Source: Haliotis rubra (Eukaryota). Taken from it: a DNA stretch of 64,000 nucleotides. Both the position numbers and the translations under genes were made by a program. Numbering within the stretch: the first letter of the stretch is position 1; every line of letters begins with the position of its first letter. The notes below the pieces were generated by a model, which ran no database searches, was not told where the DNA came from, and was given only the letters and a program-made list of their open reading frames with translations. Shown here in pieces: positions 1 to 36,974 of the stretch. The stretch spans positions 1,674,001 to 1,738,000 of the forward strand of contig NW_025766669.1 of NCBI RefSeq assembly GCF_003918875.1. The letters are read 5' to 3'.

Positions 1-732
1 GATGATTGCGCCCTGCATCCACTCGTTGAAGCGGGTGGTGCCCAACACATGACCCTCACCGGGGTCTGTGAGTGACATGTATGTCTGAGTGTGAGGACGG
101 AAGCCTGGAGAGCCAAGTGACCTGTGAGGCTTCAGGGTGACCTGTTTCCCTTTAGCCAGACAATGGTACGCCAACTGGAAGGCAAGGTACTCCACCGGGT
201 TGGGCTGACGACGTTCATCTCTCAACGCCTGAGCCAGCTTGCATGTTGTATTCATGAAGTCTTTCTCGAACTTGTTCTCGTCCCATGTCAGCTTGACCTT
301 GTTGACGTCATCGACGACGCTGAAGTTGATGTAGCCGGGTCCTTCAGTCGGGACTACGCCCACAAACAGCTCCCTCTCAGCCTCCCATTCTCGGACGATG
401 CCCAAACAGACGCGGCAGATTCGGAAGGTCGAGTCCAGAAGTTGCCTCACGGTGTTGTCCTTCAGGATCTTCTCGCCAATAGCCATGAAGGTTTCAGCCT
501 TAGAAGAGTCATCGGGAAAGATGAGTTGAAGCGTCTGTCCGAGTTGTTTGGTGACGGTCTCGTTGTCGGCAGCGGTGGTCATGGCCAGTTCTCGGTCAGA
601 CTGGAACTTCTGTGTCGTCCGGCACTCGAGTTTGATGTGGATGTTGTACAGGTTGAGCAGCATGTCGTGAAGGAGAGACAGCGATATCTGGCGTAGGGTT
701 CCCACACCAAGACACATGTTGGCTTCCTCACA
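1..732 (-). CDS. Gene A large exon (244 codons, open to window edge)
   Basis: Acceptor tttgtttccag then CEEANMCLGVGTLRQISLSLLHDMLL...WDENKFEKDF...EYLAFQLAY...WMQGAII with no stop. Missed by the ORF track because it lacks a stop inside the window. Confidence 0.9.
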
Positions 733-3314
733 CTGGAAACAAATACTCACATATCAAATACCGGAATCAATGACATTTGTTTAACAGAGATTTATATAAC
801 ATAACGGAAAACAAACAACACATGTACTTNNNNNNNNNNNNNNNNNNNNNNNNNNNNNNNNNNNNNNNNNNNNNNNNNNNNNNNNNNNNNNNNNNNNNNN
901 NNNNNNNNNNNNNNNNNNNNNNNNNNNNNNNNNNNNNNNNNNNNNNNNNNNNNNNNNNNNNNNNNNNNNNNNNNNNNNNNNNNNNNNNNNNNNNNNTTCA
1001 CTAGGTTTCACCTCCACACCTGCTATATAGACATTATTCGCGATTTGCGTGAAATTGCTGGAATATTCCTCCATATAGCTGGTATATTGCTGAGTGCGGT
1101 GTAAAACAACAAACAAATCGTGTTTCCATGTTTGTCTGCACGGTAACCGTGTGTTTAAACGACTCAGATTTACATTACTTCGGGATTTCCTCCCAAATTA
1201 AGCAGACACGCCTTGAAAAAAGTAGAACGCTATCCAAAACGGTGTTAAACCCAACTCACTCACTAACTAATGACGAGATGTACTCACCGGGATTGTTGAC
1301 TGTCCACGTGCATCATCGTTAACTTCAGCTGCAGGCAGGGGATTTTTCTCCATCAAATCAATTCGATCTGAAACCACAGACACGAAAATAAAATCGATTC
1401 AATTCATGCTACCAGAAAAAGTCACAAAACCGATATTTCCATGTTTCTTTCATATGTTGTGTTGTAAAATTAATGTTTAAATTTAAACTAATTTACCTCA
1501 ATATAATAAACAAATTTTTAATTTTGAAAGTGTTATTTTTGTTAGTCTCTCTCACAGTCCCTGAACCATATCATATTCCCTACTGCCCAGAGCTCCCTAC
1601 AATGCTAAAGCCCTAAATGAAGCAAGTCTAGATTTCCTCAAGTTCAGTTTCCCACCTGACTGGGGCTCCTTTAAAATCTAAACGGTTTATTTTATCAAAA
1701 CTATATACATTCAGAGACTAAGCGTTAGACTAGAGTTTTATTCGTTCTGACAGTATTTTAGCCATAAAGCGTCAAGATCAAATTTGCATATGAACACAAA
1801 TCAGTCATTAACACAAAGTCACACTCAAAAGCAAGATTTCGTGAACACAATCCAATATCACAATGCTATCTACAATTTATAATAATAGCCCTCATGTATA
1901 CTATTTACAATCCAGAACACGGGCCCAACGCCCAATTTTTAAAAAAGCAGGCAACTTGTAATGCACATAAAAGCATCTTTAAATCTATAGTTTACGATAC
2001 ATTTTTAGTTGCACATTTAAACTTTTGACCAGTCAGAAGGCCGCGCCTTTGGATATTCGGTTACGTAATACTCGGCGCTTGAAGGTCCGGCCTCGGTAAG
2101 TATGAGGAACCCGGATGTACAACCGGTAAAGTAGAGAGCGTTATATCGAGGGAATGACTTACCGGACACGGAGTTTCCGAAGTTGCTGTGTTGTCCATAT
2201 CCGTCATGCTGAAATAAACAATACAGGTGATTGTTGTGACAGGTGACATGCTTGTTGATGTTCAAGTATTTCCGGGATAGCACACACTCACTGCATGGCT
2301 TGTAAGGCGCATTGCGTGAGTAGATGTATGATGGGTTTGTTACGGAAGTTATACAGTGGCGTCGTACTTTTGTGAGTGTGTTTACGAGCAGAATTAGGAA
2401 AGGCATTACGTATTCACAGCCGTGGCGGTTTACATTTGTCGGAGGTACACAGTCACACTTCCATCTTTCGTGGAAGCCGCGATGGCTGAGTAGGTAAGAT
2501 GGCTGACTTTGTGTGCTGGCGAGTAGGTGCCTGATTCTAAATTAACATGGTGTGGGTTCGAAGCCCGAGGACTCAACTTAAAAAGTACTAGAATCTGTAC
2601 TTTACTGAGAACGTGTAATTACAAATATAATGTGTTACATTTGACCACTTTTTAAAAAACCCATTGTGTATTCAGAGAGAAGAAAAGGGTTGAAACTCGG
2701 ATATATTCATCCATCATTTCAAGGAAATATATCTTTCAGAAATCTGGCATGTTAGCAGAGCCCTCTGCCAAACCAATTCGTTTCTCGGGTGTTCAGTGCA
2801 CCAAGCGACACACAGCTTACACACACACTTTACAAACTCCCGGATCCCGCTCTGAATACGTGTTCACAGACAATAAATGTGGAAATATTTACCTGTATTC
2901 TCCTCATGTAGCATGCTAGAGCCGATCCCAGGAAGAGTATCCCCACACATGCAATGATTCCAATGATGAGGGCCGCTAGGGCCAGTCTCGTGTCTGGTCC
3001 ATTTGGATTGCTCTGTTAATAAGAAGGTTAACGCGTTGAGTGAACTTTCACTACAACAATGGTTGCATCAGACGTCCGTTTTGATTAGATGTACATCTTT
3101 GAACAGTTAACTTCTAGCGCCATCATCACAATCATCATCATCATCTTCAGGGGCGGTGGGGTAGCCTAGTGGTTAAAGCGTTCGCTCGTCACGCCAAAGA
3201 CCCGGGTTCGATTCCCCACATGGGTACAATGTGTGAAGCCCATTTCTGGTGTCCCCCGCTGTGATATTGCTGGAATATTGCTAAAAGCGGCTTAAAACTA
3301 AATCCACCCACTCA

Positions 3315-3350
<36 letters not shown>

Positions 3351-4276
3351 TATATCAGTTACTATACATGACAACGCTGAGCAATACGTTTCTTCTTCGC
3401 AGTCAAGTATTAACAATAATGTTCTTTCGAATACCAGTAAATATTGATGTTTCCATAAAGCGAAATTCGTTTCCGTTATATATAGTATATAGGTGTATAT
3501 AACCGAATAATTGCAGGGGTTGTAAATCTGACTTGTCAAAACTCAGATCAGGAGAAATCGTGATCCAGGATTTTCAAATTTTATCCGATTAAACACAACT
3601 ATTCATGTTTTGATAAAACAGAAATCATTTTCGTTATATCACACACACGTGTACTATGTAAAAGAACACAAACTTTATAATTATGTGTAAATCTGCCAAT
3701 GTTTAAGATAGATGAAATCGTTAACATTCACTGACACGTTGGTTGTACGAGTAGTTTCAATGCGCTCGTTAATCTGCACATATAATATGAACGTAGCATT
3801 CGCTGAGCTCTCAGTGTGGTTTGTTTGTTATATACACACTTCTCTGTAAATTTCTCTCAAATTTTAATTAATTTCCTTTTAAAATTGGGACGATAAAAAT
3901 CACCAGTAATGACTTCCCTACTTACACAATGCGACGGTTTATGAGCAGTTATTTGCGCTCTCGTCGGAGATTGAGTTTGTACAATGTAATGCACAACGAT
4001 TTGTCTAAACAGAGGCCACTGTGGAGTGTGCGCAATGACTCAGAACAAACGACAAAGAAATCGTTCATGAAAATACCACAAATGCATGGTAATTAATCAG
4101 AAATCCCATAATGACAAAATACAGTCCCCCAAATAAATTTGTTTTAAAAGTTTTATTTATCAGCTCAACGTGTTAATAAATATTGCGTAAATTCAACTGT
4201 GACAACTTACCTCGTTCTGGGCCGCGGACAAGCCAACGAGCAGTGTTAGAATCACACTGCCTAATAGTCTCCGCAT
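1..4276 (-). CDS. Gene A: uncharacterised type I membrane protein with predicted cytosolic MfnB/DUF556-like TIM barrel (multi-exon, 3' part outside window)
   Basis: Hand-built exons with GT-AG boundaries and consistent phases: 4276-4211 (MRRLLGSVILTLLVGLSAAQNE, signal peptide), 3012-2893 (SNPNGPDTRLALAALIIGIIACVGILFLGSALACYMRRIQ, TM helix), 2208-2163, 1367-1288, 732-1. The last exon is clearly paralogous to gene B (SPGFRPHTQTYMSLTDPGEGHVLGTTRFNEWMQGAII vs SPGFRPHTQTYMSFTDPGDGHVLGTTRCMNWMQGAVI). Confidence 0.85.
1542..1733 (+). mobile_element. Helentron/HINE-like ~190-bp repeat family (other copies 10872-11063 minus, 18700-19020 plus, 24425-24623 plus)
   Basis: Four similar copies. The subterminal inverted repeat AGTCCCTGAA / TTCAGGGACT is followed by a 3' hairpin GACTAAGCGTTAGTC. 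Confidence 0.65.
3149..3316 (+). mobile_element. tRNA-derived SINE family 1 (~165 bp, TCAC-repeat tail); >20 copies or fragments in window
   Basis: GGGGCGGTGGGGTAGCCTAGTGG (A box)..GGTTCGATTCCCC (B box)..GCTGGAATATTGCTAAAAGCGGCG. Copies include 6918-7075, 16225-16325, 16395-16573, 19592-19755, 27807-27972, 30065-30203, 30737-30902, 32033-32193, 33360-33765, 35340-35458, 57805-57968, 59210-59355 and 63438-63585. Confidence 0.93.
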
Positions 4277-5164
4277 GTTTGTCCAATTTGTAGTGAAACT
4301 GAAAGATATAATATACAAGCAATGCATTAAATCTTTCTAAATCAGATTCAGACTAAAAATTATAATATATGTAAACATAGGAGACGAGATATGTATTCAA
4401 AACAGAGCCAACATGTACGTATAACGTGCGTACCTGTATTCTTACATCAAGTTGGTGTTATCGAATTACCTATCATTAGTATTGCTTTGAATTCAACAGA
4501 TTTATTTGATTTTTTTTTAAAACAACAACAGATTTATAAAGAACGAAATGAAACGGTACTGGCCTGTATTTATACTTTGGCCCGTTTCCACTCTATATGA
4601 CATAGTTTATCCGACACTTACATTTCTGTATTCAATGATCCACTGACGCTTTTGAATATTTAGAAATGTAAGTAAACTCTCCACAATGTCTAAATAATTT
4701 TGGAAGAAATAGTTTCTGAAAACTAAATATGCGTTTACACTTAAATCTGTTAAACAATCTTTTCAAAGTTTATTTCATCCTAAGCTAATTCACACAAAAA
4801 AGATAATTCGTAAAAAAATATATTTAAGACAAATGTTGATATTTTCAATTGCGGTTCCCGATTTATACAAATAGCAGCAATATATGGAGATTTTACCCAG
4901 CATATCCCCAATAGGGTATTTGCAAGTTCCGTTCTTAGTAGAATTAAGAAAACGAAGTTTCAAATCCGAATAAGACTTATTAAGATATTAAGCTATTATT
5001 TTCGTTTCCACCAGTCGTTTCTTCAATCTTTCCCAAACTTACGTTCAAATTGTTGTATAATTAAGATTTATTCCTGCCGTAATCAACATAATAATTATCA
5101 TATTTAGAAATAAACGCAGTGAAGTATTATGCGTGTACAAGACAATAATGAAATTTTAACAAAC

Positions 5165-5371
5165 CTGTAAGTTTTCCAAGTGTATCGAGGATAAGCCAGG
5201 TGTTGAGGTAAGTGTGTGTCCAACCCGGCTCGCTCCGGTTTATATAACACGGCGCGTCACGTGGTACCGGATTCGTCGACCGGACTGCGCGGGCAGGATC
5301 TGGCCTCACCTTTCCAAGAACTCTCAACGGGGCATTCCCCGTTCATGCAGGTCCGGCTGGCGTCACGTGTT
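5165..5371 (-). promoter_or_regulatory. Putative core promoter and non-coding first exon of gene A: TATA box plus two GTCACGTG E-boxes
   Basis: On the minus strand: TATATAAA at ~5239-5246, GTCACGTG at 5256-5263 and 5362-5369, and a candidate donor CAG|GTTTGT at ~5164, in a locally GC/CpG-rich patch upstream of the ATG exon. Confidence 0.5.
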
Positions 5372-8300
5372 TACCAGAAGTAAATCAGCTTTACGGGGCA
5401 GCCGAGAACGAACTGAATTAATTATTCAAGTCAGGGAAAGCATCGTGGACCATATACTACATGAAATTCAGCAATTTAATTCAATTGTTGTCTATTTACG
5501 CATATTTTATTGTCGTACAAATCCACAGATCGTTATGAAACCTACACGTTGATCTCCATTATTTGCAGATTATATCTCGATAATATTATATATAAACGAA
5601 CGTTTAGCTATATGGCATCACGATTACTATTAGGTACTGGTCACACTTATCATCAACACATGCAAGGGCAAGTCAATTGTCCACCTGAAAAAATATGTTG
5701 AAATATGGTACAAGTCAAAATAAAATATGTTATATCATATAAATATCGTTCACCTATATAGGAGTAGGTAGGCGGCACACAATTCCACCCGAAGAAACTT
5801 GAATGTCTAACCACTGCGACATGTTTGATGTTGGCGATGAATTTCACTACATTTTTTTCCAGCCCTTTCTTCAAACACCATCGGAAAACTTAAATCCCAA
5901 ACCATTATGTTAAAAAAACACAATGTGTTAAAATTTAACGAATTGTTTCACTGTAAACGAATTAGTGTTTCAAAAATGTTATCTATATTTTGTAATACCT
6001 TCATGAAAACTGTACAATCTCCTTTCTAAAACATCCCGCCATCATACGTACCCTTAACTATATATTTGTACCTCTAATGCCGAGTATCCCGGCCTGAGCG
6101 TAATAAAAGTTCTGTTCTGTTCTCCAGTATTCGCAAATTATATCTCGATAACATAATAGACAAACGAACGTTAATATGGCATCACGGCGTTAAACATTGG
6201 TATTGGATACTAGTAAAAGATTCATAGACGTATTGACTAACACAAACGTCTCGGTTTAAACGAATATTCCTTTCACTACAAAATCCGCAGCTGTTAAATT
6301 TTCATTTTATGAATGGGCGGTATTACTTGCACATTCAAAAAAAGAAATTAAAAAAAGGAAAATAGACGTTCAAGTGAAAACGATCAATACTAATTTTGGC
6401 TCTCTCGGAACGATTTCTTATCACATGCCTGAAAACACGTGTTCCCTAAACCAACGCTAATAATAGCGGACACATCAGAACATGAAGTGACTCCAATTAT
6501 AGCCCTTCACACATTAAACTTGTCAGAAAGGCAATGTATTCCTGGAGAAACAGGCGGTTCTGGAACTGTAACTGAAACGACGATGTGAAGATATAGATAG
6601 CGATTATTATTAATATAGAGATTATGTCACATCGCTTTTTCGTTAATCATTTGAAAAATACTATTTCTATATATTTTATATTGACAACGTCATGGCCTAC
6701 GTGAATATGATTTGAACAGGATTTCACATGACTCGCGCTGATTAAAAAAGTTTGAAAGATGCGGTCACATATTCCTGGGAAATCACAATACTTCAGAATT
6801 TTCCTGTTCGCTACAACCTGGACGTGGCTACATGCCACAGACACGGCATCACATACCTACCTCCTGCTGTATTTATAGAGAGGTGCAAGTAGTGACAAGC
6901 GTCGTCTTTAGAGAATAAGTGAGTGAGTAAGGTTTTACGCCGCTTTTAGCATTCCAGCAATATCCCGGCAGGAGACACCAGAAATTAGCTTTACACATTG
7001 TACCAAAGTCTTGAACTGATCACAAGTTTTCGGCTTGACAAGCGATCGTTTTAGCCACTAGGCTGTCCACCACCCTCTTTCCAGGGTTGATCACTGTCAA
7101 CTCATGTTAACTGATATGCTTCACATCTCGGTTAACCTGTTTTGTCTATACCTACCAAAACCCTAGTATGGGGTACACTAGTTATGAAAGCGTCTTCAGA
7201 GTTTGACAGACACTAGAAATTGTCTTCACGAGTTGTACCTATGTGAGGAATTGAATGTCATATTTTGATTAAATCACGAATAAAAGCATATTAATTAAGA
7301 CAGTTAAAAGGTATTGTTAGTGTGTATGTCATCTGTGTCAAGGAAATTTTACTGTCATTGTTTGATATATACTATTCCAAAAAGAAACGTATAACTCATG
7401 CGAAAATGTATTTTCAAACATGTATAACTCGTCCACAAATAGACTTTAGAAAATGAATTTTTGCATCAGGTTAGAACAAGGAAATGTACAAGTGGATAAT
7501 GTTATATAATAACGGAGACGTAGCGCGGGCCCGACGTCGAATCTGGATCTCATGAGAATCAAAAGTGTAACTTTGAAAATGATGTCGACTTTCGTTTTGA
7601 TCTTTTAAGCGTTATATTTATTTTTCTTAATTTCCACAGATTTAATCAGAATAGACACGGTGGAAGCGTTGTCAAGCAATAAAACACTTCTTGAAATACG
7701 CGTCTCTATATGTTGGTGGATGTAACCTTCGTACACATATATTTTAATATTTTTTCTCTAATAATTAAAATCCATTCATTCGTTCTGTTTTTAACTTACT
7801 TTAAACCTAATTAGTGGTTTGTGTACTTTGATTATAGTTCATGTGCCCTTCACCTGCTTCGTGCATTGTATCAAAGTTGCATTTTGTGCGTTTTATTTAA
7901 GGCATCGTCATGGGTTCTCTATGATTGACAAAGGTTAACTCTGATTGAACTCAGTCAACCCTGGTTGATAGAAATATTTTAACCTCGGTTGACTCCTGTC
8001 AATTACATTTTAATCGCTTAACGCATGTCATGTAACGCCGGATCCAGGATTCTTCACTTTCCCTTTCTCTGCACTCCTCCCTCGTAACAAATAGTGAACT
8101 GTGTCAATATTTTAATGATAGATTGTTAAACAACTTTTTTATTTTTAGGACAAAAATTCTGCAAAAACCTCACAGAGTGGGTATGATGTTTTGATTATGA
8201 TCAGCGTTTCATTGAGTATTTTATGTTTATTAGTTTTCGAGTTAGATTGCAATCCATCGGTCCGCTTTTGAGCCAACCGGACTATATACTCCAAACAAAT

Positions 8301-8596
8301 CCTTTTGAACGAATATAGAAATTAATAGAAAATCATGTCCATCACTTTTATATGTCCTTCAGAGAACACATGCATACTGTCAGTCTACTGGGTATTTTTC
8401 TTTTATGATAAAGTAGATCGCACTTTTTTTCTTTTCTTTATTGAATTTTTTAAATTGTCTTCAAAGAACATTTAACAGACTTTTCAAAAAATCAACGAAG
8501 GGCATTCAGGTTACAATTGTACAAACACGATTTACAAATTATATAGCCAATCCATGCCATGAAGACCAAAGGCGCTGATATTGCACTCCATCAGAG

Positions 8597-8966
8597 AGGT
8601 GAGGTGAGGTGAAATTGGGTTTCACGTCGTGCTTGAGAATGTTTCGCTCATATGACGACGTGCATGCGTGTGTATGTGTATGGGCGGCTGCTTGTACAAG
8701 TTAAGTTGTTGTACCAGACTTAAGCTGGTTTTGTAGTGCTAGCCCACTGAGATACCATGCCGCAGTGAAGCATGAATACCCCAATCAGACACATTATACT
8801 GACTCCAAGCCGACCTGTCCTCGTTGTACCCATTAATGCCGAGCGCCAGGCAGGGACCAACAAGTACCATATTTTAACGTGTTTTGGTATGACGCGGTCG
8901 GGGATCGAACCCGCGACCTTCCGCTCTCCGGGCGGACGCTCTAACCACTACACCACGGAGGCGGTC
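8597..8966 (-). mobile_element. tRNA-derived SINE family 2 (~370 bp, TCACC tail); other copies 15798-16122 plus and 20405-20673 plus (5'-truncated)
   Basis: Head GACCGCCTCCGTGGTGTAGTGG..GGTTCGATCCCC. The three copies are highly similar, and the one at 15798 is flanked by TSD CTTTGGTCAACAG. Confidence 0.92.
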
Positions 8967-12830: not shown

Positions 12831-12918
12831 ACTCTTAGTTTTAAACACTTTAGACAATATGTACATAACGTATAGGAGTGATGCTGTATTTTTCCTTCAT
12901 CCATCACTTACGTCAATA

Positions 12919-13138
12919 CCCGTGAAGGTCCGGGTTAGAATATTGATCTTCAGTAACCCATGCTTGTCGTAAGAGGCGACTAACGGGATCGGGTGGTCAG
13001 GCTCGCTGACTTGGTTGACACATGTCATCGGTTCCCAATTGCGCAGATCGATGCTCATGCTGTTGATCACTGTATTGTCTGGTCCAGACTCGATTATTTA
13101 CAGACCGCCGCCATATAGCTGGAATATTGCTGAGTGCT
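12919..13138 (+). mobile_element. SINE-like repeat family 3 (other copies ~20965-21185 minus, 24045-24212, 29130-29240 minus, 58117-58358)
   Basis: Recurrent CCCGTGAAG.TCCGGGTTAGAAT..TCTGGTCCAGACTCGATTATTTACAGACCGCCGCCATATAGCTGGAATATTGCTGAGTGC. Shares its 3' tail with family 1. Confidence 0.85.
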
Positions 13139-22256: not shown

Positions 22257-22295
<39 letters not shown>

Positions 22296-22332: not shown

Positions 22333-22378
22333 GATACCATAACCCTGCCTGACATGAATACCGTGTACACGGTGTACA

Positions 22379-25917: not shown

Positions 25918-26751
25918 TAGCTTTATCCGTACTCCCGAATCACCTCGCACCTTCAGCATGTGCTTGAGTCATGAATTTGAATAACATCCGATCAGTTTCC
26001 TTGCTATAATATAGAATGTCGTATTCTTCAAAGTCGGTCAGAGTGCGTAAGACTTACAGTAGTATCACGGCGTGGGGACACCAGAAATGGGCTTGACTTG
26101 TCGTATTTTCTGTCCAACAGACGGACATAACCTACGTCGTCGTCATCATCATCATTCTCGACATCATCATTACCCACTGTATATGGCAATTCATCGGTCT
26201 ATACATCTACTTTATACATCTGGTGCTCGCGGTCAAAATCTACCGGCAATAAGAGTACACCCATTTCTATAATTTAATAGAGTTGTTTATAAATACGTTA
26301 CACGTTTTATGGATAACAGATTCTTTTTTATTCTTTACATGACGTTTCTTTCACCTGACCATGTATTTATGTCCAACTTCTAAATATCTTTCAAGTACTT
26401 CAGTTGTCTATAACATGTAATATGGAACGATATCTTTGCTGCCGTGGTGATGTCGCGTCCACGTTGTCCTGCATCCTGCTACGACAATATAACACGTGGT
26501 GAGTTTGGTCAGTGAGTCACTGACAGACTCTGCCATACGAGGTATCGCACTGAGTTGCGAAATGAGGGCCAGATATTTCACGAAATTGCTGACGTGAACC
26601 GTAACATTCTAATCCGGGATATGAAGGGACACCCCGACCCCTGATACAAGACAAAAAGAGCAGTCTATCTTTGCAAATGTAACTGCAGGTAGGGGTCTCC
26701 GAAATACGGCATCCAGATGATTGAAAGTGACATCGATACAACCAAGCGTGC

Positions 26752-27451
26752 AGCATCCCCAGGGTCCAGAGAACGCAATCTCTACCTAAATCAGAGCTTA
26801 CTCAACGCCGGGTGGAACTGGCCCCCTGTCTCTCATGCACGCACGCACACACGCACGCACACACGCACGCACGCACAGCGGCATTATACCCCGTAACCGC
26901 CACTCTGGTTTGTCTGGTCCAGACTCGATTACCTGCCAGGCGCCCTTATCGCTTCGTGCGGCGTGTTATTAAACAATATACAACCTCATATAACGAAACG
27001 ATCGTTCCTCATGTTTTCAATCACCAGCTAACCTAAAGAATCGAGTTTTACAGGCCGCTTTCATTTGGCGACATTGAGCAACATTTACTCTTTGTTTGAA
27101 TGAAAGCATCCCCAGGGTCCAGAGAACGCAATCTCTACCTAAATCAGAGCTTACTCAACGCCGGGTGGAACTGGCCCCCTGTCTCTCATGCACGCACGCA
27201 CGCACACACGCACGCACGCACAGCGGCATTATACCCCGTAACCGCCACTCTGGTTTGTCTGGTCCAGACTCGATTACCTGCCAGGCGCCCTTATCGCTTC
27301 GTGCGGCGTGTTATTAAACAATATACAACCTCATGTAACGAAACGATCGTTCCTCATGTTTTCGATCACCAGCTAACCTAAAGAATCGAGTTTTACAGGC
27401 CGCTTTCATTTGGCGACATTGAGCAACATTTACTCTATGTTTGAATGAAAG
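26752..27451. repeat. Near-identical ~350-bp tandem duplication
   Basis: agcatccccagggtccagag.. starts at 26752 and 27105. The copies differ in (GCAC)n length and a few substitutions. Confidence 0.95.
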
Positions 27452-28918
27452 AATTCCTACACTCAATACCCACTTTGTATCCTTAACAGGCATATTATCA
27501 CGGTAGACAAACATAACAAAAATACCTTTCTAATAAGAGTTGTAGAGTTGGGGACACAGTATACCAGGTATATCGTGGCTTGTCAGCTTAATGTGGGGAA
27601 AAAAGTAGTCTTGATGCTTTACTTACCGATATGTCAGTGAAGTCATTCAAGACTTAGTGTCAATGTTAACACGGATTAAAAAAAATTAGATTATGAATTT
27701 AATTTGGCTTAATTTTTAAAGTAATGTTTAATAACCCCAAACATTTACAGATACACTGGTATAAGTAAGGTTACTTTACACCGGTGTGTCAATGCATGCC
27801 TAAAACGGGGCGGTGGAGTAGCCTAGTGGTTCAAGTGTTGGCTCGTCACGCCGAAGACCCGGGTTCGATTCCCCACATAGGTACAATGTGTGAAGCCCAT
27901 TTCTGGTGTCCCCCGCCGTGAAATTGCTCGATTATTACTAAAAGCGGCGTAAAACTAAACTCACTCACTCACACAAAGCCTTTTACCACATTGTAAGAGA
28001 ATTCGTACCCATTTGTTATAAAAGGATTTAAAAATATATTGTAAGGGATCTGGAATAATGGAAATAATATAATTTTACTTTTACAAAGTCCAAATGGTCA
28101 TCAGAGGTGTGCTACACCGCCGCCAGCGCGGATAATGTTAACATTATTTTAAGCATTCCGTCTTCCGGGTTAAGCCAATGCGTAGAAGAAAATGTTCAAA
28201 CATAATCAGGTTAACACGACCTAACACGTGACTGTCTCGAGTCGGCTTTCAGCAAGGTGAAGGTCATCGTTAAGCGCAATGTCAAGGCAGGCTTTCCGTT
28301 GGTATTCACGTTGGCGAAACCGGACCAAGACCAATCTGGTATAGCACATTCGCTTTAAACGGATGTCTGGGGGTGGGGTGGGTTTTTTTCACAACAACAG
28401 GATTGCACCATACATCACGTTGATAAATAAACTGTCTATGTCCGGACCGTGTTCTCGGGAAAATGAATGCCTCAGCCAATCGGATCAGTTTAACCACAGC
28501 AGGTTGATCAATGTAGATCTACAAACCGCAAGTGCACGTGTTTCAATAAAAGAAAAAAACGAGAAAGAAGTCCCAGCATCAATACGGTAGAAATCCGTCG
28601 TCCTATCGGACAAGGGAAGTTTCGAAACAACCAGACTGGGGATTTGGAAGACAAATGAGTTGATTTTGATCTGTTTCCGAGGACACAATGTAGCATTAAA
28701 TGCAGACACATGAACACTAAAGAACTCGCTACCAGGGACTCATGAACCAGGCTCCGCTGCATGGTATGTATGGCTGACTGGTTTGTTTGATTTGATAGTT
28801 TTGTTTGATATATATCGCCATTGTTGACTTGAGAGATATTTTGTAATTTTGCTAACTTTGAAGTGGAGGTTGTTTTTGACCATCATTTTGAAACATATCA
28901 TTATTCATAAGTATAATT

Positions 28919-29084: not shown

Positions 29085-31866
29085 TCATAAGTATAATTAG
29101 TTTGGTGGTTTTGTTGTTGTTTGCATTGTATGTTGTTTTACGCCGCACTCAGAAATATTCCAGCTATACGGCCGCGGTCTGTAAATGATCGAGTCTTTAC
29201 CAGACAATCCAGTGATCAACAGCATGAGCATCTATCTGTTTAATTAGTAGTAGTACAATCATCGTTGTCATCATCATCGTCGTATTTTGTTTATCTATTT
29301 TTATTGCTACGATCCGGTGTTTAAGTAAATAGTTGTCATGAGGATCGAGTGTTAAGTGTTACAACCTTTTCAGCTATGGACACTATCATAGAACTGACAC
29401 ACCTAACAATTTAAAACATCCAGTGACGTCATAAACGTTTTGGTTATTATGGTATGATAACTCCGTGTTGCTGGGCCCAGTCCAGCTATGCCTAATTATA
29501 GAACGATCTCCGTTGTCTGTGAAGTAGTCCAGCTATGCCTAATTATAGAACGATCTCCGTTGTCTGTGAAGTTAGTTTTCACAGAGCTATTGTCTAAATG
29601 TGACTCAAACGCTATTACTGTGATTGACAAATCCACAGGTACTCAACTGGAGTCTCAATATTGTAAGTGTCCATTTTTCTCTTCATGTTTGATAAACAAT
29701 AACTTTCTCTTATCAGTATGACAGTATGTGGAAAACAACACGATAAGGGTCCGTTCATAATTTATGGCTAGGAGCGGTGAAGTTGATGGTGAAGATGGGG
29801 TGGTTTGGGTGGGTGGGTGGTGTGTTCAACCATTTTGTACATTGATTTTGTGATATTGTACTTACTTTGTACTTCAAATTGGTGTGTGTGTGTGTGGTGT
29901 GTGTGTTCATTCACATTGTACATGCTACTCCAAAAAATCAGTCTTCATTAAAAAATCATACATTTTAGCATTGCATCAAGGGAAATGAATGTGGTTCAGG
30001 GACTGTGGGACTGTGGCACAGCCCATGCATCAGATGGAATTGAGCAGTGACTGAGTTAGTGGGGTTTAGTTTTACGCCGCTTTTAGCAATATTACAGCAA
30101 TATCACGGCTGGGAACACCAGAAATGGGCTTCATACATTGTACCTATGTGGGGAATCGGACCCGTTTCTTTGGCGTGACGAGCGAGCGCTTTAACAACTA
30201 GGCGACATTATAATTTCACAAGAGATTGCAGTGAGTTGTGTAAGGCAATCACTGTGCTCTTGACCAAAAACTTCTTACCACCCGCCAAACCACCATAATT
30301 GACTCTTTTGTTCATCATTAAATATCATTTTTGTAATCATTTGTTATTACACAGAGTATATTTGTTAATTACATTAAGAGCCATTGATATAAACATACAT
30401 TTCACTGTGTTTGTTTAATTTTGACTGTGTGTGGTTTCATTTTGGACTTATTTTCTAAAAACTCCCTCTATATCAACATTTTTCACCGGTCCCGAGCGAT
30501 ATCGGTTTAGAGGGAGTCCACTGTACATATTGTGTTCTAGGAAATCTGACCCTCAGGCGCAACTTTTCCTACGATTCTAATGCATCAATGCATTACACGC
30601 ACACGTATATTATTCATGAAACTGATGAATTTGAAGAAGTCCTTTCGATTGCATAGATAGATATTGGGTGCCTACATGCACCACATATATACGCTATACT
30701 TTTCGATGTGTTATATGATAGGTATTTACACGAGCGAGTGAGTGAGTGAGTATAGTTTTACGCCACTTTTATCAATATTCCTGCAATATCACGGCGAGGG
30801 ACACCAAAAATTGGTTTCACACATTGTACCCTTGTGGGGAATCGAACCCGGGTCTTTGGCGTGATGAGCGAACGCTTTAACCACTAGGCTACCCCACTGC
30901 CCATTATTTACACGACTTAACTTGAGACATGTTTTTTTATATAGATACATTTTGTGAGATGATCCAGTATGATTAGTAGTTACAGAATGTATTATGTGCC
31001 CATCATATGATGGCTCTCTGAAACCATATGCAACTGAAACCATTGAGAACTTTCCCTCCCACAAGAGTCTAATTTGATTGGTCGGGTATTTTTAGCGCCG
31101 CGTCATTAAATGGAGCCGTTACATTGTTATGTATTACAACAGGATGGAGACGCAATAATCGCGACTGATTGTTTTAACAACCCGGGTTGTTTTCATGGAA
31201 ATGTGTCTTGAAACGTTCCTAGCCGGTTCTAAATTATGCCAATCACTGGACATAAAATGCATGAAATTATCATGGTATACTATGAATTTGTCTAACGGAA
31301 ATGTCAAATGTTAAGTGTCCAGATTCCCTCAGATCACGATATCTAAATGTTATCCCTCTGTGGAGCAGATAACCCAAGAAGCCTGTGATGTGCTGTGTAA
31401 GCCTGCGAAGTTGGTTATCACAGAATTCAGGGGCAGATCCAGCTTTTGGAAAAGGGGCGCGGGTTGGCAGGTCGGTCGGGGGTGTTGCACAGGTTATTAA
31501 CACCCGCTTTCACGACAGTTCCCATTGTTTTTTAANNNNNNNNNNNNNNNNNNNNNNNNNNNNNNNNNNNNNNNNNNNNNNNNNNNNNNNNNNNNNNNNN
31601 NNNNNNNNNNNNNNNNNNNNNNNNNNNNNNNNNNNNNNNNNNNNNNNNNNNNNNNNNNNNNNNNNNNNNNNNNNNNNNNNNNNNNNNNNNNNNNNNNNNN
31701 NNNNNNNNNNNNNNNNNNNNNNNNNNNNNNNNNNNNNNNAATGTTTAAATCTGCCTCGCACGACATAGTTTCAATGTCAAATCGACACTTAGATTACTGG
31801 AGTCATATCATTAAGTCCTCATTTTCTTTTCACGTTAATTCAAAAAGTAATTTCTTATTATTACAG

Positions 31867-34800
31867 GTTGACAGCATGGCCTGGATGTACACGAGTTGGT
31901 TTGCACTGATCGGAGCCTGTCTATCAACAGTTGGGCTAGTCGGATTGGGAGCGATGTTAGCGCTATGGACCTGCTCTCATATCACGCAGGTAGGTCAGTT
32001 TTATAGGCAACAGTGAGCAGGTGGGGCTACAGTGAGCGAGTGAGTATGGTTTTGCGCCGCTTTTAGCAATATTCCAGCAATATTACGGCGGGCGACACCA
32101 GAAATGGGCTTCACACGTTGTACCCGTATGGGGAATCGAACCGTGTCTTCAGCTTGACGAGCGAACACTTTCACGACTAGGCTACCCAACCGCCTCTGTT
32201 GGGCAGCAGTCCTCGATGGTGGGGTTCAGTGGGATGGTATCTGGTAGAGAGTTACATATTTTATCCAACATAACTGAGAGAGTAAATGTTGCTTTAAGCC
32301 GCACCAGCAATGTTGCAGGTTTTCGCGGTATCACCATAATTATTATTTGTTATTTGTCTTTGATAAATTTGAAAAAAAGAAAAACATTTAATTTTTTTAG
32401 AAATACAAAAAAACCCATCTTAATGAAGTCTGCAAGTAAATCACAGGCGCATCAGACATTCAGTCAAACAAGCGGTTGATTATTTTTCTAAAACAATTTA
32501 CGCTCAATTTCTTCACACACATTAGATATGAATAAAGAAGAATTTCAATATTGCTGTTTCAGAGGTTATCAATGCGATCTACTTGGAGCAAGCTGTATAC
32601 CAGTAAGTCTTAATGGGAAAACTCCAGTGTTATCAGTGTCACAGCTCCCGCAGGCCTGTTAAGTGATAGGCGATAAGTCGGTCTTAGGGTTAACATAGCT
32701 TTGGGTAACCGAACCTCAGCAACAGGTGCTAGTCGTGGTGTCCTAAAGCACAAAGTCATAATGAAATATATTTCATATGACGTTTGTCTACTTTTTATCA
32801 TTTAATCCTTTTTTTAATTTGTGATACGCGTTCATAATAGCAACAGTTAACAATTTTAAGAAATGTATATAACATTATCAGCTTTTGATAAGGATATATT
32901 ATTTTAATTGTCCGGTTTAGGGCTGAACGAGGTCGATTGTTCGGATGTGTTGTCATACCAATAGTATATGATATTGTAGCGGAACTGAATCATGTTTCCT
33001 TTTAATTCAACAAATACGAAATCATATTCAAGTTTATCTACCGCGGGTAAAATATTCTCAAAGTGATGTGTATGTACTTTTCTGTTCACAGAGCATAGGC
33101 GAACTGTAATTTACGTTTCTCGACTACGGTGCCAGGTCTCTGACGTAAATGTTCTGTGTTGTAGGCAGGTCAGACCTCGGACAGTCCGGCCCAACCTCGG
33201 TCACCAAAGAAGACATCTGCCGTGTGGACGTGGACGTGGACGTGGACGTGGACGTGGACGTGGACGACAATGGCTTGATCACGGAAGAACTGGTACAAAA
33301 CATTTCACATTGCTAAAATCTTCATGATTCAAGTGCATCTTTTATAATAAATATTGGGACGTGAGTGAGTATGGTTTTACGCCGCTTTTCCAGCAATATC
33401 ACGCGCGGTTGACACCAGAAATGGGCTTGGGACGTGGGTTAGACTAGTGGTTAAAGGCCTCCGCCAGTCAAGCCTAAGGTTTGGGTTCGCTTCCCCGCAT
33501 TGGTACATTGTGTGAGTGAGTGAGTTGGGTTTTGCGCCGCTTTTAGCAATATTCCAGTAATATCACGGCGGGGGACACCTGAAATGGGTGTCACATATTG
33601 TACCCATGTGGGGAACCCGGGGCCTTCGGCGTGACGAGCGAACGCTTTAATCACTAGGTTATCCCGCCGCCCTGTACAATGTGTGAAGCCTTGGCTGTTT
33701 GTGTCCCCCGCTGTGACATTGCTGGAATATTGATGAAAGCGGCGTAAACGCATATTCATTCACCGCTGTAGTGGCTACAGATGGTTTTGCAACTGATGAA
33801 CGGTATATCAGAGAGTATACACGATACTCCACCCTCTCAGCATTAGCAAAGGTAGTTTTCACACATTTTGCCAGCCACATCTGAATTGCGTTATATTTCT
33901 ACGAATCACTGGGGCTGTTCCAAGCGCTAAAATGAAGTGAGTGAGGGGGTGAATGGTTATGGTTTACGCAGCTTTAAGCAATCCTTCAGCAAAACTACTA
34001 CAGGACCATTCCGAAGAATATGTCAGCTACCTGTTCGAGTCTAACACTTCAAATTCTGAGATTGTAGTCATGTTCTGTTTTGAACATTCTGAATTGATGA
34101 TGTCTTTAAAATCCATGCATGTTCCATATACAGTGTCCTGCGACCGTGACAGCTGGTGTTGGCACCCTCCGACAGGTGGCAGTCTCTAGTCTCCACGACC
34201 TACTCCTCGGCCTTGCCACGCTCCGACCCCCGGGGAAAGAAAGGGAGAATTCAACGCCACCCTCATCTACTCCCATCGAGGACACGGACAGGGATGTCGG
34301 TCCCCACACCCAGGAAAATGTATCGATGCCACGCCCGAACACAGAGAGGCGTATGTCACTCCTCAACAGACACCTACCGGTTTGTGAGACGCTGGACGGA
34401 GAATACGTACCACTCTCAGACATACCAACCTACATGGTAACTAGTACTGAAACGATGAGCAATCCTGTTGCACCTATGATGTCGGCAGATGTTGCGAAAC
34501 CTGCACTCTCTGCAGCGTTGTCTCCTCCTTCACGCATGGACAATCACTCCGCCCACGTCAACACGACCACATCTGCAGACACGGACGCCTTCAGGGCATA
34601 CGTGAATCGTCAGGTCGAGGCCATCTTCCCCAAGGACAGCATGCGGCGCGAGACCTTCTTATCCATCGTTGAGGAGATCCTGTTCGCCTCCACTGCCCAG
34701 CTCGTAACAGACGCCGTCTTCAGGGCGTTCAGGGTCACCCTGGGAGTAATGCGTCATTGGGAACTCGAGCATGCACTTGTGGGTGCCTTTCCAAGAGAGG

Positions 34801-36974
34801 CTCAAGGCGAGATCACATACCAGGTTAGAAAATCGTATTATGACATACACAAATCCCACAGGAGTGTAAAGAACCGGAATTCGCTATGTTTGCGTTCCAA
34901 AATCGTATGATAATTGGTTCGAATCCCGGTTAAAACTGATAATGTCTATGGGATCGTTAGCTTGTGACCGTGGGTTTCACTAAAGAGCTAAGCGTCTAGT
35001 CTTAGAACTGCGTCACTAAGCATCAAGGGGCGGTGGGGTAGCCCAGTGGTTAAAGCGTTCGCTTGTCACACTGAAGGCCCGTGTTCTATTCCCTACAAGG
35101 GTACTCTGTGTGAAGCCTATTTCTGGTGTCCCCCGCCGTGATATTGCTGGAATATTGCTGAAAACGGCGTAAAAACCAACTCACTCACTCACTAAGCATC
35201 AAAGCGCTAAAAGTGTAAGACTTGCATCACTGCGCTGCTCCATCAACACCCATACTAGTATACGACAATAAAGGTTATACCTTACCTAAATCGGATCAAA
35301 TTTTTGAGGAGGAAATCAGAAACTGGTATTTATCTTCATGTTACGCCGCCTTTAGCAATATTCCAGCAAGATCATGAGGAAGAACACCAGAAGTGGGGAT
35401 TTGAACCCGGATTTACGGTGTGACGAACGAACACTTCAACTACGAGGCTACCACACCGTCCTATATCTGTGTTTTAAACATCATATCTATTGCTGACTTT
35501 GGTCCATTTTCAGGTCCAGTTTGTCTTGAATACCGTCACTTTCACATGGGACAAACACAAGTATGGGTCAGATTTGATACAGACGATGTCACAGATAGCC
35601 CACCATCTCCGGGAACAGGAACGGCAACCGACGTGCTCAGAATACCTGGCCTACCAGCTGGCATACTACAAGCTGTCCAAGGGACATCGTTTGGACTTGT
35701 CCGCGCACATGCCTATAGGATCCCCCGGATTCCGCCCACACACGCAAACATACATGTCCTTCACAGATCCAGGCGATGGACACGTGTTGGGTACAACTCG
35801 TTGTATGAACTGGATGCAGGGCGCGGTCATCAACGTGGATACCCAGAGTCACCAGCCAGAGGAACACCCTGCTGATAAACGACCATCTTTGTTAGATCTG
35901 TCCAAGGTGCGCCTCCACACAGGATCAGCAGCGCCAACCTCCACATCTGTGGGAACAGCGGTTCTCTCTGAATATGGTGGATTTGATGAACAGTTTGGGG
36001 AGATAGTTTATGTGGTATCCTCTGAAGCCACAGCGGCCTTCCATCGGGGAGCTGCCGAGTACAAGGTGACCATGGACGGACTCAGTACAAGCCAGGTTGT
36101 GAGGTACATGAGAGCTCTAACTTCTAACGTCAGCCGTGAACGCTTCAGTCAGCTTCTTTCCGCTGCGTGGACTCTCAACCAGATCGTTTTTGACGACTAT
36201 GAGCGAGAAAAACCAATGCATCTTGTCAGCAACAGCGATATAGCAATGAGAATTCTTGAGATAACCTCAATGGGTGGTTTCGATGCTGTGTGCCTCACGG
36301 GAGGAAGTGGTGACAGTATTTCAAAGGACATGTTGGGATTTGAAGAAGCTCTTGTCTTCAATCACCGGGCTCACATGCTCGGTCTGGTCACACACGTATC
36401 TGGTATCAAGTTCGACAAAATCAGACAGGCTGTGTTTGCCGGAGTAGACATTATCGGCATAGCGGGAGGAACAGCGTTGAGGTTCATGGACAGTGAGAGC
36501 GGCATTCTCGGACCTCACATGGAGGACGTCCAGAGGATCCTGCAGAGCAGAGACGACGCTGCCAAGTCTGTCCGCGGAAGAGGCGCGCACCTCCTGGTCA
36601 GACTGGACACCATGCTCTTCGAGGGAACCATTAGCCAACAACAGAACATTCTCAGAGAACAGTTATTAAAAGCTCTAAAGTCGAAGCGCAAAGCCGAAAT
36701 AGAAAACCTACTTAATGAACTCCATGTCGTCTGCTGTGAAGCTACTACTTCCCGCCACGTTGTGGAGGGTACTGCAGGTCGTCTGTGCCGCGCTACGGCG
36801 CCATTGCTGCAACAATGCGCAGACAGTGCAACCGAGTGGCGGATGTTCATTGCCCGTCTCAGGCTGCTTCTACATGCAAAAGACAATCTTTATTTAGTAG
36901 AGGAATACGAGAGCGAGCCGTGGCTGACTTATCGACGGAAATACACTGACCAGCTTAAAGCAATGGTACTGTAG
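31867..36974 (+). CDS. Gene B: uncharacterised single-pass membrane protein with predicted cytosolic MfnB/DUF556-like TIM barrel, paralogue of gene A
   Basis: Exons 31867-31989 (VDSMAWMYTSWFALIGACLSTVGLVGLGAMLALWTCSHITQ, TM), 32563-32602, 33165-33292, 34134-34823, 35514-36974 (TAG). All are GT-AG and in frame, and phases 0/1/0 match gene A. About 813 aa. The start is uncertain: ATG 31876, an ATG|GT at 28761-28765, or an exon in the N-gap. Confidence 0.87.
34134..34823 (+). CDS. Gene B exon (230 codons) with S/T/P-rich insertion
   Basis: Part of ORF 34119-34910 between the acceptor catatacag and the donor CAG|GTTAG. GVGTLRQ and IFP..S...ETF blocks match gene A. Confidence 0.88.
35027..35188 (+). 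mobile_element. SINE family 1, full length with 14-bp TSD, in gene B intron
   Basis: TSD TCACTAAGCATCAA at 35013-35026 and 35189-35202. Confidence 0.95.
35514..36974 (+). CDS. Gene B terminal exon (486 aa) carrying the TIM-barrel-like domain
   Basis: Long ORF 35490-36974 with acceptor ccattttcag. Contains GAAEYKVTMDG, GGFDAVCL, AHMLGLVT and AGVDIIGIAGG beta/alpha motifs. Confidence 0.92.
   Translation, partial: VQFVLNTVTFTWDKHKYGSDLIQTMSQIAHHLREQERQPTCSEYLAYQLAYYKLSKGHRLDLSAHMPIGSPGFRPHTQTYMSFTDPGDGHVLGTTRCMNWMQGAVINVDTQSHQPEEHPADKRPSLLDLSKVRLHTGSAAPTSTSVGTAVLSEYGGFDEQFGEIVYVVSSEATAAFHRGAAEYKVTMDGLSTSQVVRYMRALTSNVSRERFSQLLSAAWTLNQIVFDDYEREKPMHLVSNSDIAMRILEITSMGGFDAVCLTGGSGDSISKDMLGFEEALVFNHRAHMLGLVTHVSGIKFDKIRQAVFAGVDIIGIAGGTALRFMDSESGILGPHMEDVQRILQSRDDAAKSVRGRGAHLLVRLDTMLFEGTISQQQNILREQLLKALKSKRKAEIENLLNELHVVCCEATTSRHVVEGTAGRLCRATAPLLQQCADSATEWRMFIARLRLLLHAKDNLYLVEEYESEPWLTYRRKYTDQLKAMVL

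What the first reader, a model, noticed from the sequence alone, without database searches (positions are those of the whole stretch)
1..36974. Head-to-head pair of diverged paralogues with conserved exon phases, one invisible to the ORF track
Seen: gene A (minus) and gene B (plus) diverge across a ~27-kb spacer in which I found no other gene. Both have a TM exon (40 vs 41 codons ending Q|GT), a short phase 0-to-1 exon (46 vs 40 nt), a phase 1-to-0 exon, then an exon starting with Cys before GVGTLRQ. The blocks SPGFRPHTQTYMS.TDPG.GHVLGTTR and EYLA.QLAY are nearly invariant while linkers diverge. Inference: an old duplication with both copies under purifying selection, possibly a co-regulated or heteromeric active/inactive pair.
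Basis: partly seen in the sequence, partly recalled or inferred. Interest (0 to 1): 0.75.

Follow-up and report, generated by a model that had tools for sequence, protein, structure and literature searches.

The report
Divergent abalone enzyme gene pair
Two neighbouring abalone genes that point away from each other are old copies of one membrane-anchored enzyme of an unnamed family; one copy is strictly conserved, and the other is still expressed but has lost many residues that every other family member keeps.

Summary
Gene A (minus strand, 5 exons, 755 aa) and gene B (plus strand, 810-814 aa) are the only two copies in this Haliotis genome and are 48% identical. Their exon layout matches: a TM exon of 120 vs 123 nt ending Q|GT, a 46 vs 40 nt exon (phase 0 to 1), an 80 vs 128 nt exon (phase 1 to 0), then an exon starting with Cys.

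- B has a further 5' exon ending ATG|GT at 28763, so the spacer is about 24.4 kb, not 27 kb.
- B has one extra intron.
- All four N gaps lie in introns or between the genes.

The order A(-) | B(+) | MCM5(-) is shared with H. asinina, H. rufescens and Patella; Lottia also has a head-to-head pair.

A is under strong constraint (dN/dS 0.06) and keeps 95 of 95 family-invariant columns. B has dN/dS 0.30 and has lost 26 of them, yet it is spliced in RNA contigs and open in three species. It also carries a conserved B-only insert.

Gene conversion occurs: in H. rufescens, A and B differ at 1 of 248 nt in one tract.

The family has no Pfam or NCBIfam model. Its barrel is closest to MfnB (Z 24.6), but it is not a PF04476 member. 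Bacterial homologues sit beside HxlR, MDR reductase and DJ-1 genes. Heteromer formation and co-regulation were not tested.

The parts
4211..4276 (-). Gene A exon 1: ATG plus a 22-codon signal-peptide-like segment (MRRLLGSVILTLLVGLSAAQNE), ending in phase 0
   Evidence: Same 66-nt exon in H. asinina. Identical to the N-terminus of public protein P0122.
2893..3012 (-). Gene A exon 2: 40 codons with a short ectodomain (NES sequon) and the TM helix, ending RRIQ|GT
2163..2208 (-). Gene A exon 3: 46 nt, phase 0 to 1
1288..1367 (-). Gene A exon 4: 80 nt, phase 1 to 0
830..996 (.). Assembly gap inside gene A intron 4 (733-1287); no coding sequence is affected
   Evidence: The product is colinear with P0001 and identical to P0122. 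The H. asinina intron is 361 nt, against 388 read bases here.
1..732 (-). Gene A exon 5: first 732 of 1956 nt. It starts with Cys (CEEANMCLGVGTLRQ), encodes the whole soluble enzyme part, and continues 1224 nt left of the window as one open frame.
4277..28636 (.). Intergenic spacer of about 24.4 kb: transposon debris and interspersed repeats, two N gaps (13572-13825, 13921-14254) in low-complexity repeat, no gene found
   Evidence: No gene is called in the 19.3-kb H. asinina spacer.
17067..17813 (-). Tc1/mariner-like transposase remnant (N-terminal HTH domains only)
   Evidence: HTH_29, HTH_Tnp_Tc3_2
28637..28763 (+). Gene B exon 1: 5' UTR ending in ATG|GTATGT. The ATG is in frame with exon 2. 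The 5' end is only estimated, from 127 extra bases in an RNA contig.
   Evidence: homology to H. asinina exon 1; X1 record 1 carries 127 nt 5' of 31866
31536..31739 (.). Assembly gap inside gene B intron 1 (28764-31866)
31867..31989 (+). Gene B exon 2: 41 codons (VDSMAWMYTSWFALIG...HITQ|GT) with the TM helix and an internal ATG at 31876
   Evidence: RNA contigs lie on 31866-31986 with spliced continuation on both sides.
32563..32602 (+). Gene B exon 3: 40 nt, phase 0 to 1
   Evidence: exon-only RNA depth
33165..33292 (+). Gene B exon 4: 128 nt, phase 1 to 0. It contains a (GTGGAC)n repeat coding (VD)n, 30 nt longer than in H. asinina and H. rufescens.
   Evidence: RNA contigs break in the repeat.
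34134..34823 (+). Gene B exon 5: starts with Cys (CPATVTAGVGTLRQ), N-terminal helical domain
   Evidence: An RNA contig joins 34820 directly to 35511, the same junction given the repeated CAG.
34224..34562 (+). B-specific insert of about 113 aa in the loop between helices 1 and 2. It contains PRPNTERRxSLL..GEYVP, conserved in three Haliotis species.
   Evidence: alignment, with dN/dS 0.16-0.22 in columns 180-240, among the lowest windows in B.
35514..36974 (+). Gene B exon 6: MfnB-like barrel and C-terminal helical domain; stop codon at 36972-36974
   Evidence: An RNA contig runs through the stop codon and 157 nt past 36989.
36378..36635 (+). Segment of B that matches the A/B gene-conversion tract
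   Evidence: A-B dS is 0.39 here against more than 1 elsewhere. H. rufescens A and B differ at 1 of the first 248 nt.
40365..41406 (-). 3' end of MCM5, convergent with gene B (synteny marker)
   Evidence: MCM5_C domain

Best explanation
The locus is an ancient inverted (head-to-head) duplication of a gene for an N-terminally membrane-anchored enzyme. It probably predates the split between limpets and abalones.

The enzyme part is about 650 aa and predicted to be cytosolic. It consists of a helical N-domain, a TIM barrel most like MfnB, and a helical C-domain. The family is widespread but undescribed.

Gene A is the conserved copy and is presumed to be catalytically active. It has a signal peptide, a tiny ectodomain and one TM helix.

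Gene B has only a TM helix. It is transcribed, correctly spliced and still constrained. However, it has lost many residues that are invariant elsewhere, including the HVEHLERP strand motif in all three Haliotis species. It has also gained a conserved B-only insert. B is therefore most likely a pseudoenzyme or a copy with a changed function, not a decaying pseudogene.

The two copies occasionally exchange sequence by gene conversion.

What is shown: the gene models, the synteny, the selection figures, B's splicing, the fold and the conversion. What is inferred: the topology, the activity of A, the inactivity of B, and any chemistry. Bacterial neighbours suggest reactive-carbonyl metabolism, and the catalytic set differs from MfnB's.
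For: - Only two copies exist in the genome.
- The exon models have canonical splice sites and matching phases. The same exon sizes occur in H. asinina and H. rufescens. The gene A model is identical to public protein P0122.
- RNA-type contigs X1-X3 cover B's exons but not its introns. They join exon 5 to exon 6 and carry exon 2 with spliced flanks. The DNA run X5 covers the introns.
- Synteny was found in five species.
- dN/dS is 0.06 for A and 0.30 for B, and B is below 1 in every window.
- A keeps 95 of 95 conserved columns; B has lost 26, 31 or 17 depending on species.
- The AF2 model has pLDDT 90. MfnB (4rc1) is the top match: Foldseek E 7e-8; VIA Z 24.6, rmsd 2.6 A over 231 aa, with the next barrel at 18.2; hhalign probability 63%, E 7e-5.
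- Gene conversion is seen.
- Bacterial neighbours: HxlR in 6 of 6 Bacillota loci, an MDR reductase in 7 of 9 loci across three phyla, and DJ-1/PfpI in 3.
Against:
- No activity data exist for any family member, so 'active' and 'inactive' rest on conservation alone.
- B keeps the invariant lysine K322 and much of the barrel, so a changed activity is as possible as none.
- The ancient date rests on synteny. The Patella copies are 70% identical, which fits either concerted evolution or a separate, younger duplication.
- No tree or branch model could be run, because the script machine was lost.
- The TM and signal-peptide calls come from reading the sequence, not from a predictor.
- The two profile alignments disagree on which residue matches MfnB D151.
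Confidence: 0.7

Rival explanations
1. Gene B is a functional enzyme with a changed substrate or chemistry (neofunctionalised), not an inactive partner.
For: - B has an open frame of 810-814 codons in three species and dN/dS 0.30.
- It keeps K322, the SPGFRPHTQTYMS..GHVLGTTR block and most structural glycines.
- It has a conserved B-only insert.
- It is expressed and spliced.
Against: - 26 of 95 columns that do not vary from bacteria to molluscs are changed.
- The HVEHLERP strand has a 3-residue deletion in all three species.
- In this species and H. asinina the GVDGIGIGGAQ loop and TYFSAGFKF are also altered. In H. rufescens the same segment was overwritten by A's sequence, which suggests no B-specific requirement there.
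Confidence: 0.25
2. Gene B is a transcribed pseudogene on its way to loss and has no function.
For: - Its protein divergence from H. asinina is nearly six times that of A (16% against 2.8%).
- It has lost conserved residues, and H. asinina has a further 9-codon deletion in the barrel.
Against: - There is no stop codon or frameshift in about 2.4 kb in three species separated by dS 0.3-0.6.
- dN/dS is 0.30 overall and 0.13-0.79 in all windows.
- The B-only insert has among the lowest dN/dS values in B.
- All splice sites are intact and used.
Confidence: 0.07
3. The pairs in Haliotis, Patella and Lottia arose by independent duplications at the same site, so the Haliotis duplication is younger than the synteny suggests.
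For: - The Patella copies are 70% identical, with about 140 identical residues in a row, against 48% in Haliotis.
- Both Patella copies are closer to A (64% and 62.5%) than to B (44% and 42%).
- B's extra intron is absent from the Patella copy in B's position.
Against: - Patella and Lottia share the orientation and the split into a signal-peptide-plus-TM copy and a TM-only copy.
- In Patella the TM-only copy is also the one next to MCM5.
- Gene conversion is demonstrated directly and explains the high within-species identity.
- The 5' exon layout is shared between A and B.
Confidence: 0.2

Closest known systems
MfnB / MJ1099, 4-(hydroxymethyl)-2-furancarboxaldehyde-phosphate synthase (Pfam PF04476, PDB 4RC1/4U9P)
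   Same: Residues about 206-490 of the gene A model superpose on almost the whole MfnB chain: Z 24.6, rmsd 2.6 A, 231 of 238 residues, 20% identity. That is 6 Z units above any other barrel. Profile-profile alignment gives E 7e-5. MfnB Lys85 aligns with the family-invariant K322 in both alignments.
   Different: - The PF04476 model finds nothing in the proteins or in the whole genome, even at E 10. It also misses the family's copy in a Streptomyces genome that has a true MfnB.
- The protein is about 650 aa with extra helical N- and C-domains.
- At the strand that carries MfnB's Asp25-x-Lys27 (the Schiff-base lysine, PMC6604932), the family reads IIHVE, with invariant His and Glu. This is my own reading and is not covered by the profile alignment.
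- Lys155 aligns with an Asp.
- The bacterial neighbours are HxlR, MDR reductase and DJ-1 genes, and none matched a Pfam family linked to methanofuran synthesis.
Enzyme/pseudoenzyme paralogue pairs (a conserved active copy next to a divergent copy that has lost catalytic residues)
   Same: One copy is under strong constraint with all conserved residues. The other is expressed and constrained but lacks many of them. Lottia shows the same pattern with the roles of the two copies reversed.
   Different: No activity, binding or complex has been shown for either protein. Which residues are catalytic is itself unknown for this family.
Conserved divergent (head-to-head) gene pairs with a bidirectional promoter
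   Same: The divergent orientation is conserved in three abalone species and two limpets.
   Different: The 5' ends are about 24 kb apart here, 19-28 kb in other abalones and 5.5-5.9 kb in limpets. The spacer is filled with transposon debris. This is far beyond the sub-kilobase spacing of the classical bidirectional promoter (general knowledge). Co-expression was not tested.

Membership tests
MfnB / 4HFCP_synth (PF04476) | Match to the Pfam PF04476 model above its cut-off | tested here: not met
   No hit for either gene's exons or for 32 family members. No hit in six frames of the whole genome at E <= 10, while the control methanogens ring.
MfnB / 4HFCP_synth (PF04476) | TIM-barrel fold superposable on MJ1099 | tested here: met
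   Foldseek E 7e-8, TM 0.81 by target. VIA Z 24.6, rmsd 2.6 A over 231 aa, next fold at 18.2. Atlas rows with PF04476.
MfnB / 4HFCP_synth (PF04476) | Sequence-profile homology to MfnB | tested here: inconclusive
   hhalign of the barrel core against 5 MfnB sequences: probability 63%, E 7e-5, 176 columns. With the full-length profile the probability is only 9%, E 0.0036.
MfnB / 4HFCP_synth (PF04476) | Asp25 and the Schiff-base Lys27 (D-x-K at the end of strand 2; PMC6604932) | tested here: inconclusive
   The profile alignments start after this strand. By eye, MfnB IIDVK lies opposite the family's IIHVE, with H240 and E242 invariant. That would mean both residues are replaced. A residue-level structural superposition was not available.
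MfnB / 4HFCP_synth (PF04476) | Essential Lys85 | tested here: met
   It aligns with K322 (AECKVAMEG), which is invariant in 32 sequences, in both profile alignments. It is kept in gene B.
MfnB / 4HFCP_synth (PF04476) | Asp151 and Lys155 | tested here: inconclusive
   One search puts D151 opposite the invariant D400 and K155 opposite D404. One search aligns this stretch differently. D400 is Thr in gene B here and in H. asinina.
MfnB / 4HFCP_synth (PF04476) | Single-domain protein of about 235 aa in a methanofuran-synthesis context | tested here: not met
   The protein is about 650 aa with three domains. Of nine bacterial or archaeal loci examined, eight have HxlR, MDR reductase or DJ-1 genes as neighbours; the thaumarchaeal one has none of these. 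No neighbour that was scanned matched a Pfam family linked to methanofuran synthesis.
Pseudoenzyme paralogue (gene B) | Loss of residues invariant in the active family | tested here: met
   26 of 95 columns are changed in B, 31 in H. asinina B, 17 in H. rufescens B, and 0 in A.
Pseudoenzyme paralogue (gene B) | Retained open frame, purifying selection and expression | tested here: met
   dN/dS is 0.30 in three pairwise comparisons. Spliced RNA contigs exist. The exon structure is intact in three species.
Pseudoenzyme paralogue (gene B) | Demonstrated lack of catalytic activity | not testable with these tools
   This needs recombinant protein and a known substrate, and neither exists for this family.
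Bidirectional-promoter gene pair | Transcription starts less than about 1 kb apart | tested here: not met
   A's ATG is at 4276 and B's exon 1 at about 28637-28763, roughly 24 kb apart. The spacers are 5.9 kb in Patella and 5.5 kb in Lottia.

The most novel reading that the evidence does not exclude
The pair could be a membrane-tethered complex of a catalytic subunit (A) and a regulatory pseudoenzyme subunit (B). Both would belong to a previously undescribed three-domain enzyme family with an MfnB-type barrel but a His/Glu-based active site. The family would act on reactive carbonyl compounds. Among named animals in this search it appeared only in molluscs, at 40-50% identity to fungal, algal and bacterial proteins, so it may have reached the mollusc ancestor by horizontal transfer. 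Limpets and abalones would then have added the anchor exons. In this reading B's conserved insert, which carries an RRxS motif, is the regulatory input.
Probability: 0.15. Interest if true: 0.75.

Novelty: new variant of a known kind. Interest (0 to 1): 0.5.

Why it matters
Tandem duplicates are common, so the pair itself is ordinary. Three things make this locus more useful than most.

1. It is a clean natural case in which a conserved copy and a degenerate copy stay side by side for a very long time. Lottia shows the same outcome with the roles reversed. In H. rufescens a conversion event has partly reset the degenerate copy. This makes it a good system for asking why dead-looking copies are kept.

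2. It points to a large, strongly conserved protein family (molluscs, fungi, green algae, many bacteria including Limosilactobacillus) that has no Pfam or NCBIfam model and no literature. There is now a confident fold assignment (MfnB-like) and a testable bacterial context (HxlR, MDR reductase, DJ-1).

3. It shows a soluble enzyme turned into a membrane-anchored one by the addition of short 5' exons.

Tried and rejected
- **HeLo/HET-s lead.** The N-terminal helical domain gave a weak PDB profile hit to HET-s (E 0.5). I folded the domain alone (pLDDT 90). Foldseek found nothing at E <= 0.001. A full VIA search gave only generic helical bundles, best Z 7.5, with no HeLo entry. Rejected.
- **Family libraries.** Pfam and NCBIfam gave nothing for either gene or for bacterial homologues.
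- **Non-coding RNA.** Rfam found no RNA gene in 1-37500.
- **Literature.** Searches on MfnB, UPF0264, DUF556 and PF04476 found no paper on this family. The 'DUF556' hits in two of the papers were DUF5565 and DUF5568.
- **Phylogeny and codon models.** A tree and branch or RELAX tests were planned, but the script machine was lost. Later comparisons were done with the alignment tools and by counting.
- **Patella A copy.** One look-up for P0002 failed because the machine did not answer. The locus fetched for P0003 already showed it.
- **Spliced models.** The joined proteins and coding sequences were built only inside scripts, for local alignment and dN/dS, and were never sent to a search tool.
- **Other rules.** No N gap was filled, and no contig looked human.
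Full report
**What is there**

The window is G000:C1779:1674001-1738000 of a 1.38-Gb Haliotis genome. Orthologues in H. asinina lie at dS about 0.2 and in H. rufescens at about 0.5.

A tblastn of gene B's large open frames against the window found a second, diverged copy on the minus strand at 738-1. That copy runs off the left edge, so the ORF list omits it. In the whole genome there are only these two copies. Gene A's last exon is one uninterrupted 657-aa frame ending at contig position 1672840, so A is not disrupted downstream.

**Gene models**

I mapped the N-termini of annotated orthologues, read the junctions and assembled the models locally.
- Gene A (minus): exons at 4276-4211, 3012-2893, 2208-2163, 1367-1288 and 732 to beyond base 1. 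Sizes are 66, 120, 46, 80 and 1956 nt, giving 755 aa.
- Gene B (plus): exons at 31867-31989, 32563-32602, 33165-33292, 34134-34823 and 35514-36974. It gives 810 aa from the ATG at 31876.

All junctions are GT..AG. H. asinina and H. rufescens have the same exon sizes. My gene A protein is identical to a public 755-aa protein, P0122.

There are two corrections. First, the H. asinina model of B begins with an upstream exon that contributes only the ATG. Its homologue here ends ...GCTGCATG|GTATGT at 28761-28763. B therefore has six exons, and the spacer is about 24.4 kb. Second, B has an intron (34824-35513) where A has none. The Patella gene in B's position also lacks it.

**Gaps**

- 830-996 lies in A's intron 4.
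- 31536-31739 lies in B's intron 1.
- 13572-13825 and 13921-14254 lie in an intergenic low-complexity repeat.

No frame crosses a gap, and none was filled.

**Transcription**

Runs X1-X3 are transcriptome-sized contig sets from the same organism. They cover B's exons and give zero depth in the non-repeat intron bins. The DNA run X5 covers the introns.
- One 2364-nt contig joins 34820 directly to 35511. This is the modelled junction, given the repeated CAG. The contig runs through the stop codon into the 3' UTR.
- A 317-nt contig lies on 31866-31986. It has 127 further bases on the 5' side and 69 on the 3' side, which fits the last 3 bases of exon 2, all of exon 3 and the start of exon 4.
- The chain breaks only in the (GTGGAC)n repeat of exon 4.

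Its support is the matching orthologue models and the public protein.

**Spacer**

The spacer holds a Tc1-like transposase remnant, a zf-RVT fragment and many SINE-like repeats. It has no Rfam match. The equivalent 19.3-kb H. asinina spacer has no annotated gene.

**Age and synteny**

The order MFS transporter, A(-), B(+), MCM5(-) holds in H. asinina and H. rufescens (27.6-kb spacer). The window shows A(-), B(+), MCM5(-); A's downstream neighbour here was not examined.

In Patella vulgata a 751-aa gene (signal peptide plus TM) lies head-to-head, 5.9 kb from a 720-aa gene (TM only), which is followed by MCM5. Lottia has a 758-aa and a 734-aa gene head-to-head, 5.5 kb apart.

This argues that the pair predates the limpet-abalone split. 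No tree could be built after the script machine was lost, so independent duplication remains a rival.

**Selection**

- A against its H. asinina orthologue: dN 0.012, dS 0.21, omega 0.06.
- B against its orthologues: omega 0.30 in all three pairwise comparisons.
- A against B: dS is saturated at 1.8.

Among 95 alignment columns that are identical in at least 30 of 31 family members from bacteria to molluscs, A keeps all 95. B has lost 26 here, 31 in H. asinina and 17 in H. rufescens. The losses include H240N, a deletion removing E242, R246T, K396A, D400T, Y435H, G455I and G459A.

Even so, every 60-codon window of B has omega below 1. A B-only insert of about 113 aa (34224-34562) carries PRPNTERRxSLL..GEYVP, conserved in three species, and has omega 0.16-0.22. 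B is therefore constrained but probably not as the same enzyme.

In Lottia the degenerate copy is the other one. The signal-peptide copy P0042 has K322A and many further losses, while the TM-only copy is intact.

**Gene conversion**

In one tract (window 36378-36635 in B) A-B dS falls to 0.39, against more than 1 elsewhere. Between A here and H. rufescens B it falls to 0.24. Aligning the DNA shows that H. rufescens A and B differ at one of the first 248 positions. The Patella copies share about 140 identical residues in a row. The inverted copies therefore exchange sequence from time to time.

**What the protein is**

The family has no Pfam or NCBIfam model. It has more than 200 relatives:
- many molluscs, mostly about 648 aa without the anchor;
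- chytrid and basidiomycete fungi;
- green algae;
- bacteria of several phyla, and one thaumarchaeon.

These relatives are 35-68% identical to A.

AlphaFold gives pLDDT 90 and pTM 0.91. The model has a helical N-domain (residues 1-190), a TIM barrel (about 206-490) and a helical C-domain.

The barrel's nearest solved structure is MfnB/MJ1099, with Foldseek E 7e-8 and VIA Z 24.6 against 18.2 for the next barrel. A profile alignment of the barrel core reaches E 7e-5.

The family is not a PF04476 member. That model misses it everywhere. MfnB Lys85 matches the invariant K322. However, the strand that carries Asp25 and the Schiff-base Lys27 (PMC6604932) reads IIHVE in this family. That is my own reading, and the profile alignments do not cover the strand. 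The chemistry is therefore likely to differ from MfnB's.

The N-domain alone has no specific structural relative, and a weak HeLo hint was dropped.

**Bacterial context**

- In six Bacillota genomes the homologue sits beside an HxlR-type regulator (6 of 6).
- A zinc-type MDR oxidoreductase is the neighbour in five of them, and also in a gammaproteobacterium and a Microbacterium.
- A DJ-1/PfpI protein is present in three.

From general knowledge of HxlR regulators and DJ-1/PfpI proteins, this points to aldehyde, quinone or other reactive-carbonyl metabolism. It is an association only.

**Topology (inferred by reading)**

A has a signal-peptide-like start, about 13 residues outside the membrane including an NES sequon, a 26-residue hydrophobic helix and then MRRIQ. 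B has a short acidic N-terminus, a helix and then basic residues. Both would place the enzyme part in the cytosol.

The spliced models were searched exon by exon by reference. The joined sequences were used only inside scripts.

**Verdict**

The 'active/inactive' idea fits the residue and selection data. Heteromer formation and co-regulation remain untested.

Noticed in passing
L029, L008, L035, L036, L034, L026, L032, L044 (bacterial loci; homologue at about 7.4-9.7 kb in each): Bacterial homologues of this family sit next to an HxlR regulator, a zinc-type MDR oxidoreductase and often a DJ-1/PfpI protein. The MDR partner recurs in three phyla. This looks like a conserved electrophile or reactive-carbonyl module around an unnamed enzyme.
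   Followed up: partly
L058:15864-16127 and L005:14282-14545 (H. rufescens genes A and B): The two H. rufescens paralogues are 99.6% identical over about 248 nt (1 difference), against saturated dS elsewhere. This is a recent gene conversion that restored A-type barrel residues in B.
   Followed up: yes
L055 (Lottia gigantea); proteins P0042 and P0004: Lottia also has a head-to-head pair, but there the degenerate copy is the one with the signal peptide (K322A and many other losses), and the TM-only copy is intact. This is the reverse of Haliotis.
   Followed up: partly
window 33218-33275 (gene B exon 4): A coding (GTGGAC)n microsatellite gives a (Val-Asp)n run. It is 30 nt longer here than in H. 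asinina and H. rufescens. Transcript contigs break at it.
   Followed up: partly
window 34224-34562 (gene B exon 5): A B-only insert of about 113 aa sits in a loop that has low model confidence (pLDDT 64-86) at the matching place in A's model. Its core, PRPNTERRxSLL..HLPVCETL.GEYVP.SDIP, is conserved in three species. It contains a basic RRxS motif that resembles a kinase site (from memory, not tested).
   Followed up: partly
window 28742-28763: An upstream ATG at 28742 in B's 5' exon is out of frame with the ATG at 28761. After splicing it would end after 8 codons, which makes it a possible short upstream ORF.
   Followed up: no
window 8714-8942, 15796-16024, 20407-20554 and others: Copies of a short interspersed repeat are 96-100% identical to each other in both orientations. 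Each carries the same small spurious ORF (MNTPLRHIILTPSRPVLVVPINAERQAGTNKYHILT), which suggests a recently active SINE- or MITE-like element.
   Followed up: no
window 124-696 (+): A 190-aa ORF lies antisense to gene A's last exon. It has no family match and is most likely a by-product of the coding strand's composition.
   Followed up: no
family-wide (one search hit list): Among named animal hits only molluscs appear, yet identity to fungal, algal and bacterial proteins is 40-50%. This patchy spread could reflect horizontal transfer or wide loss. Only the best 120 of 208 hits were seen.
   Followed up: no
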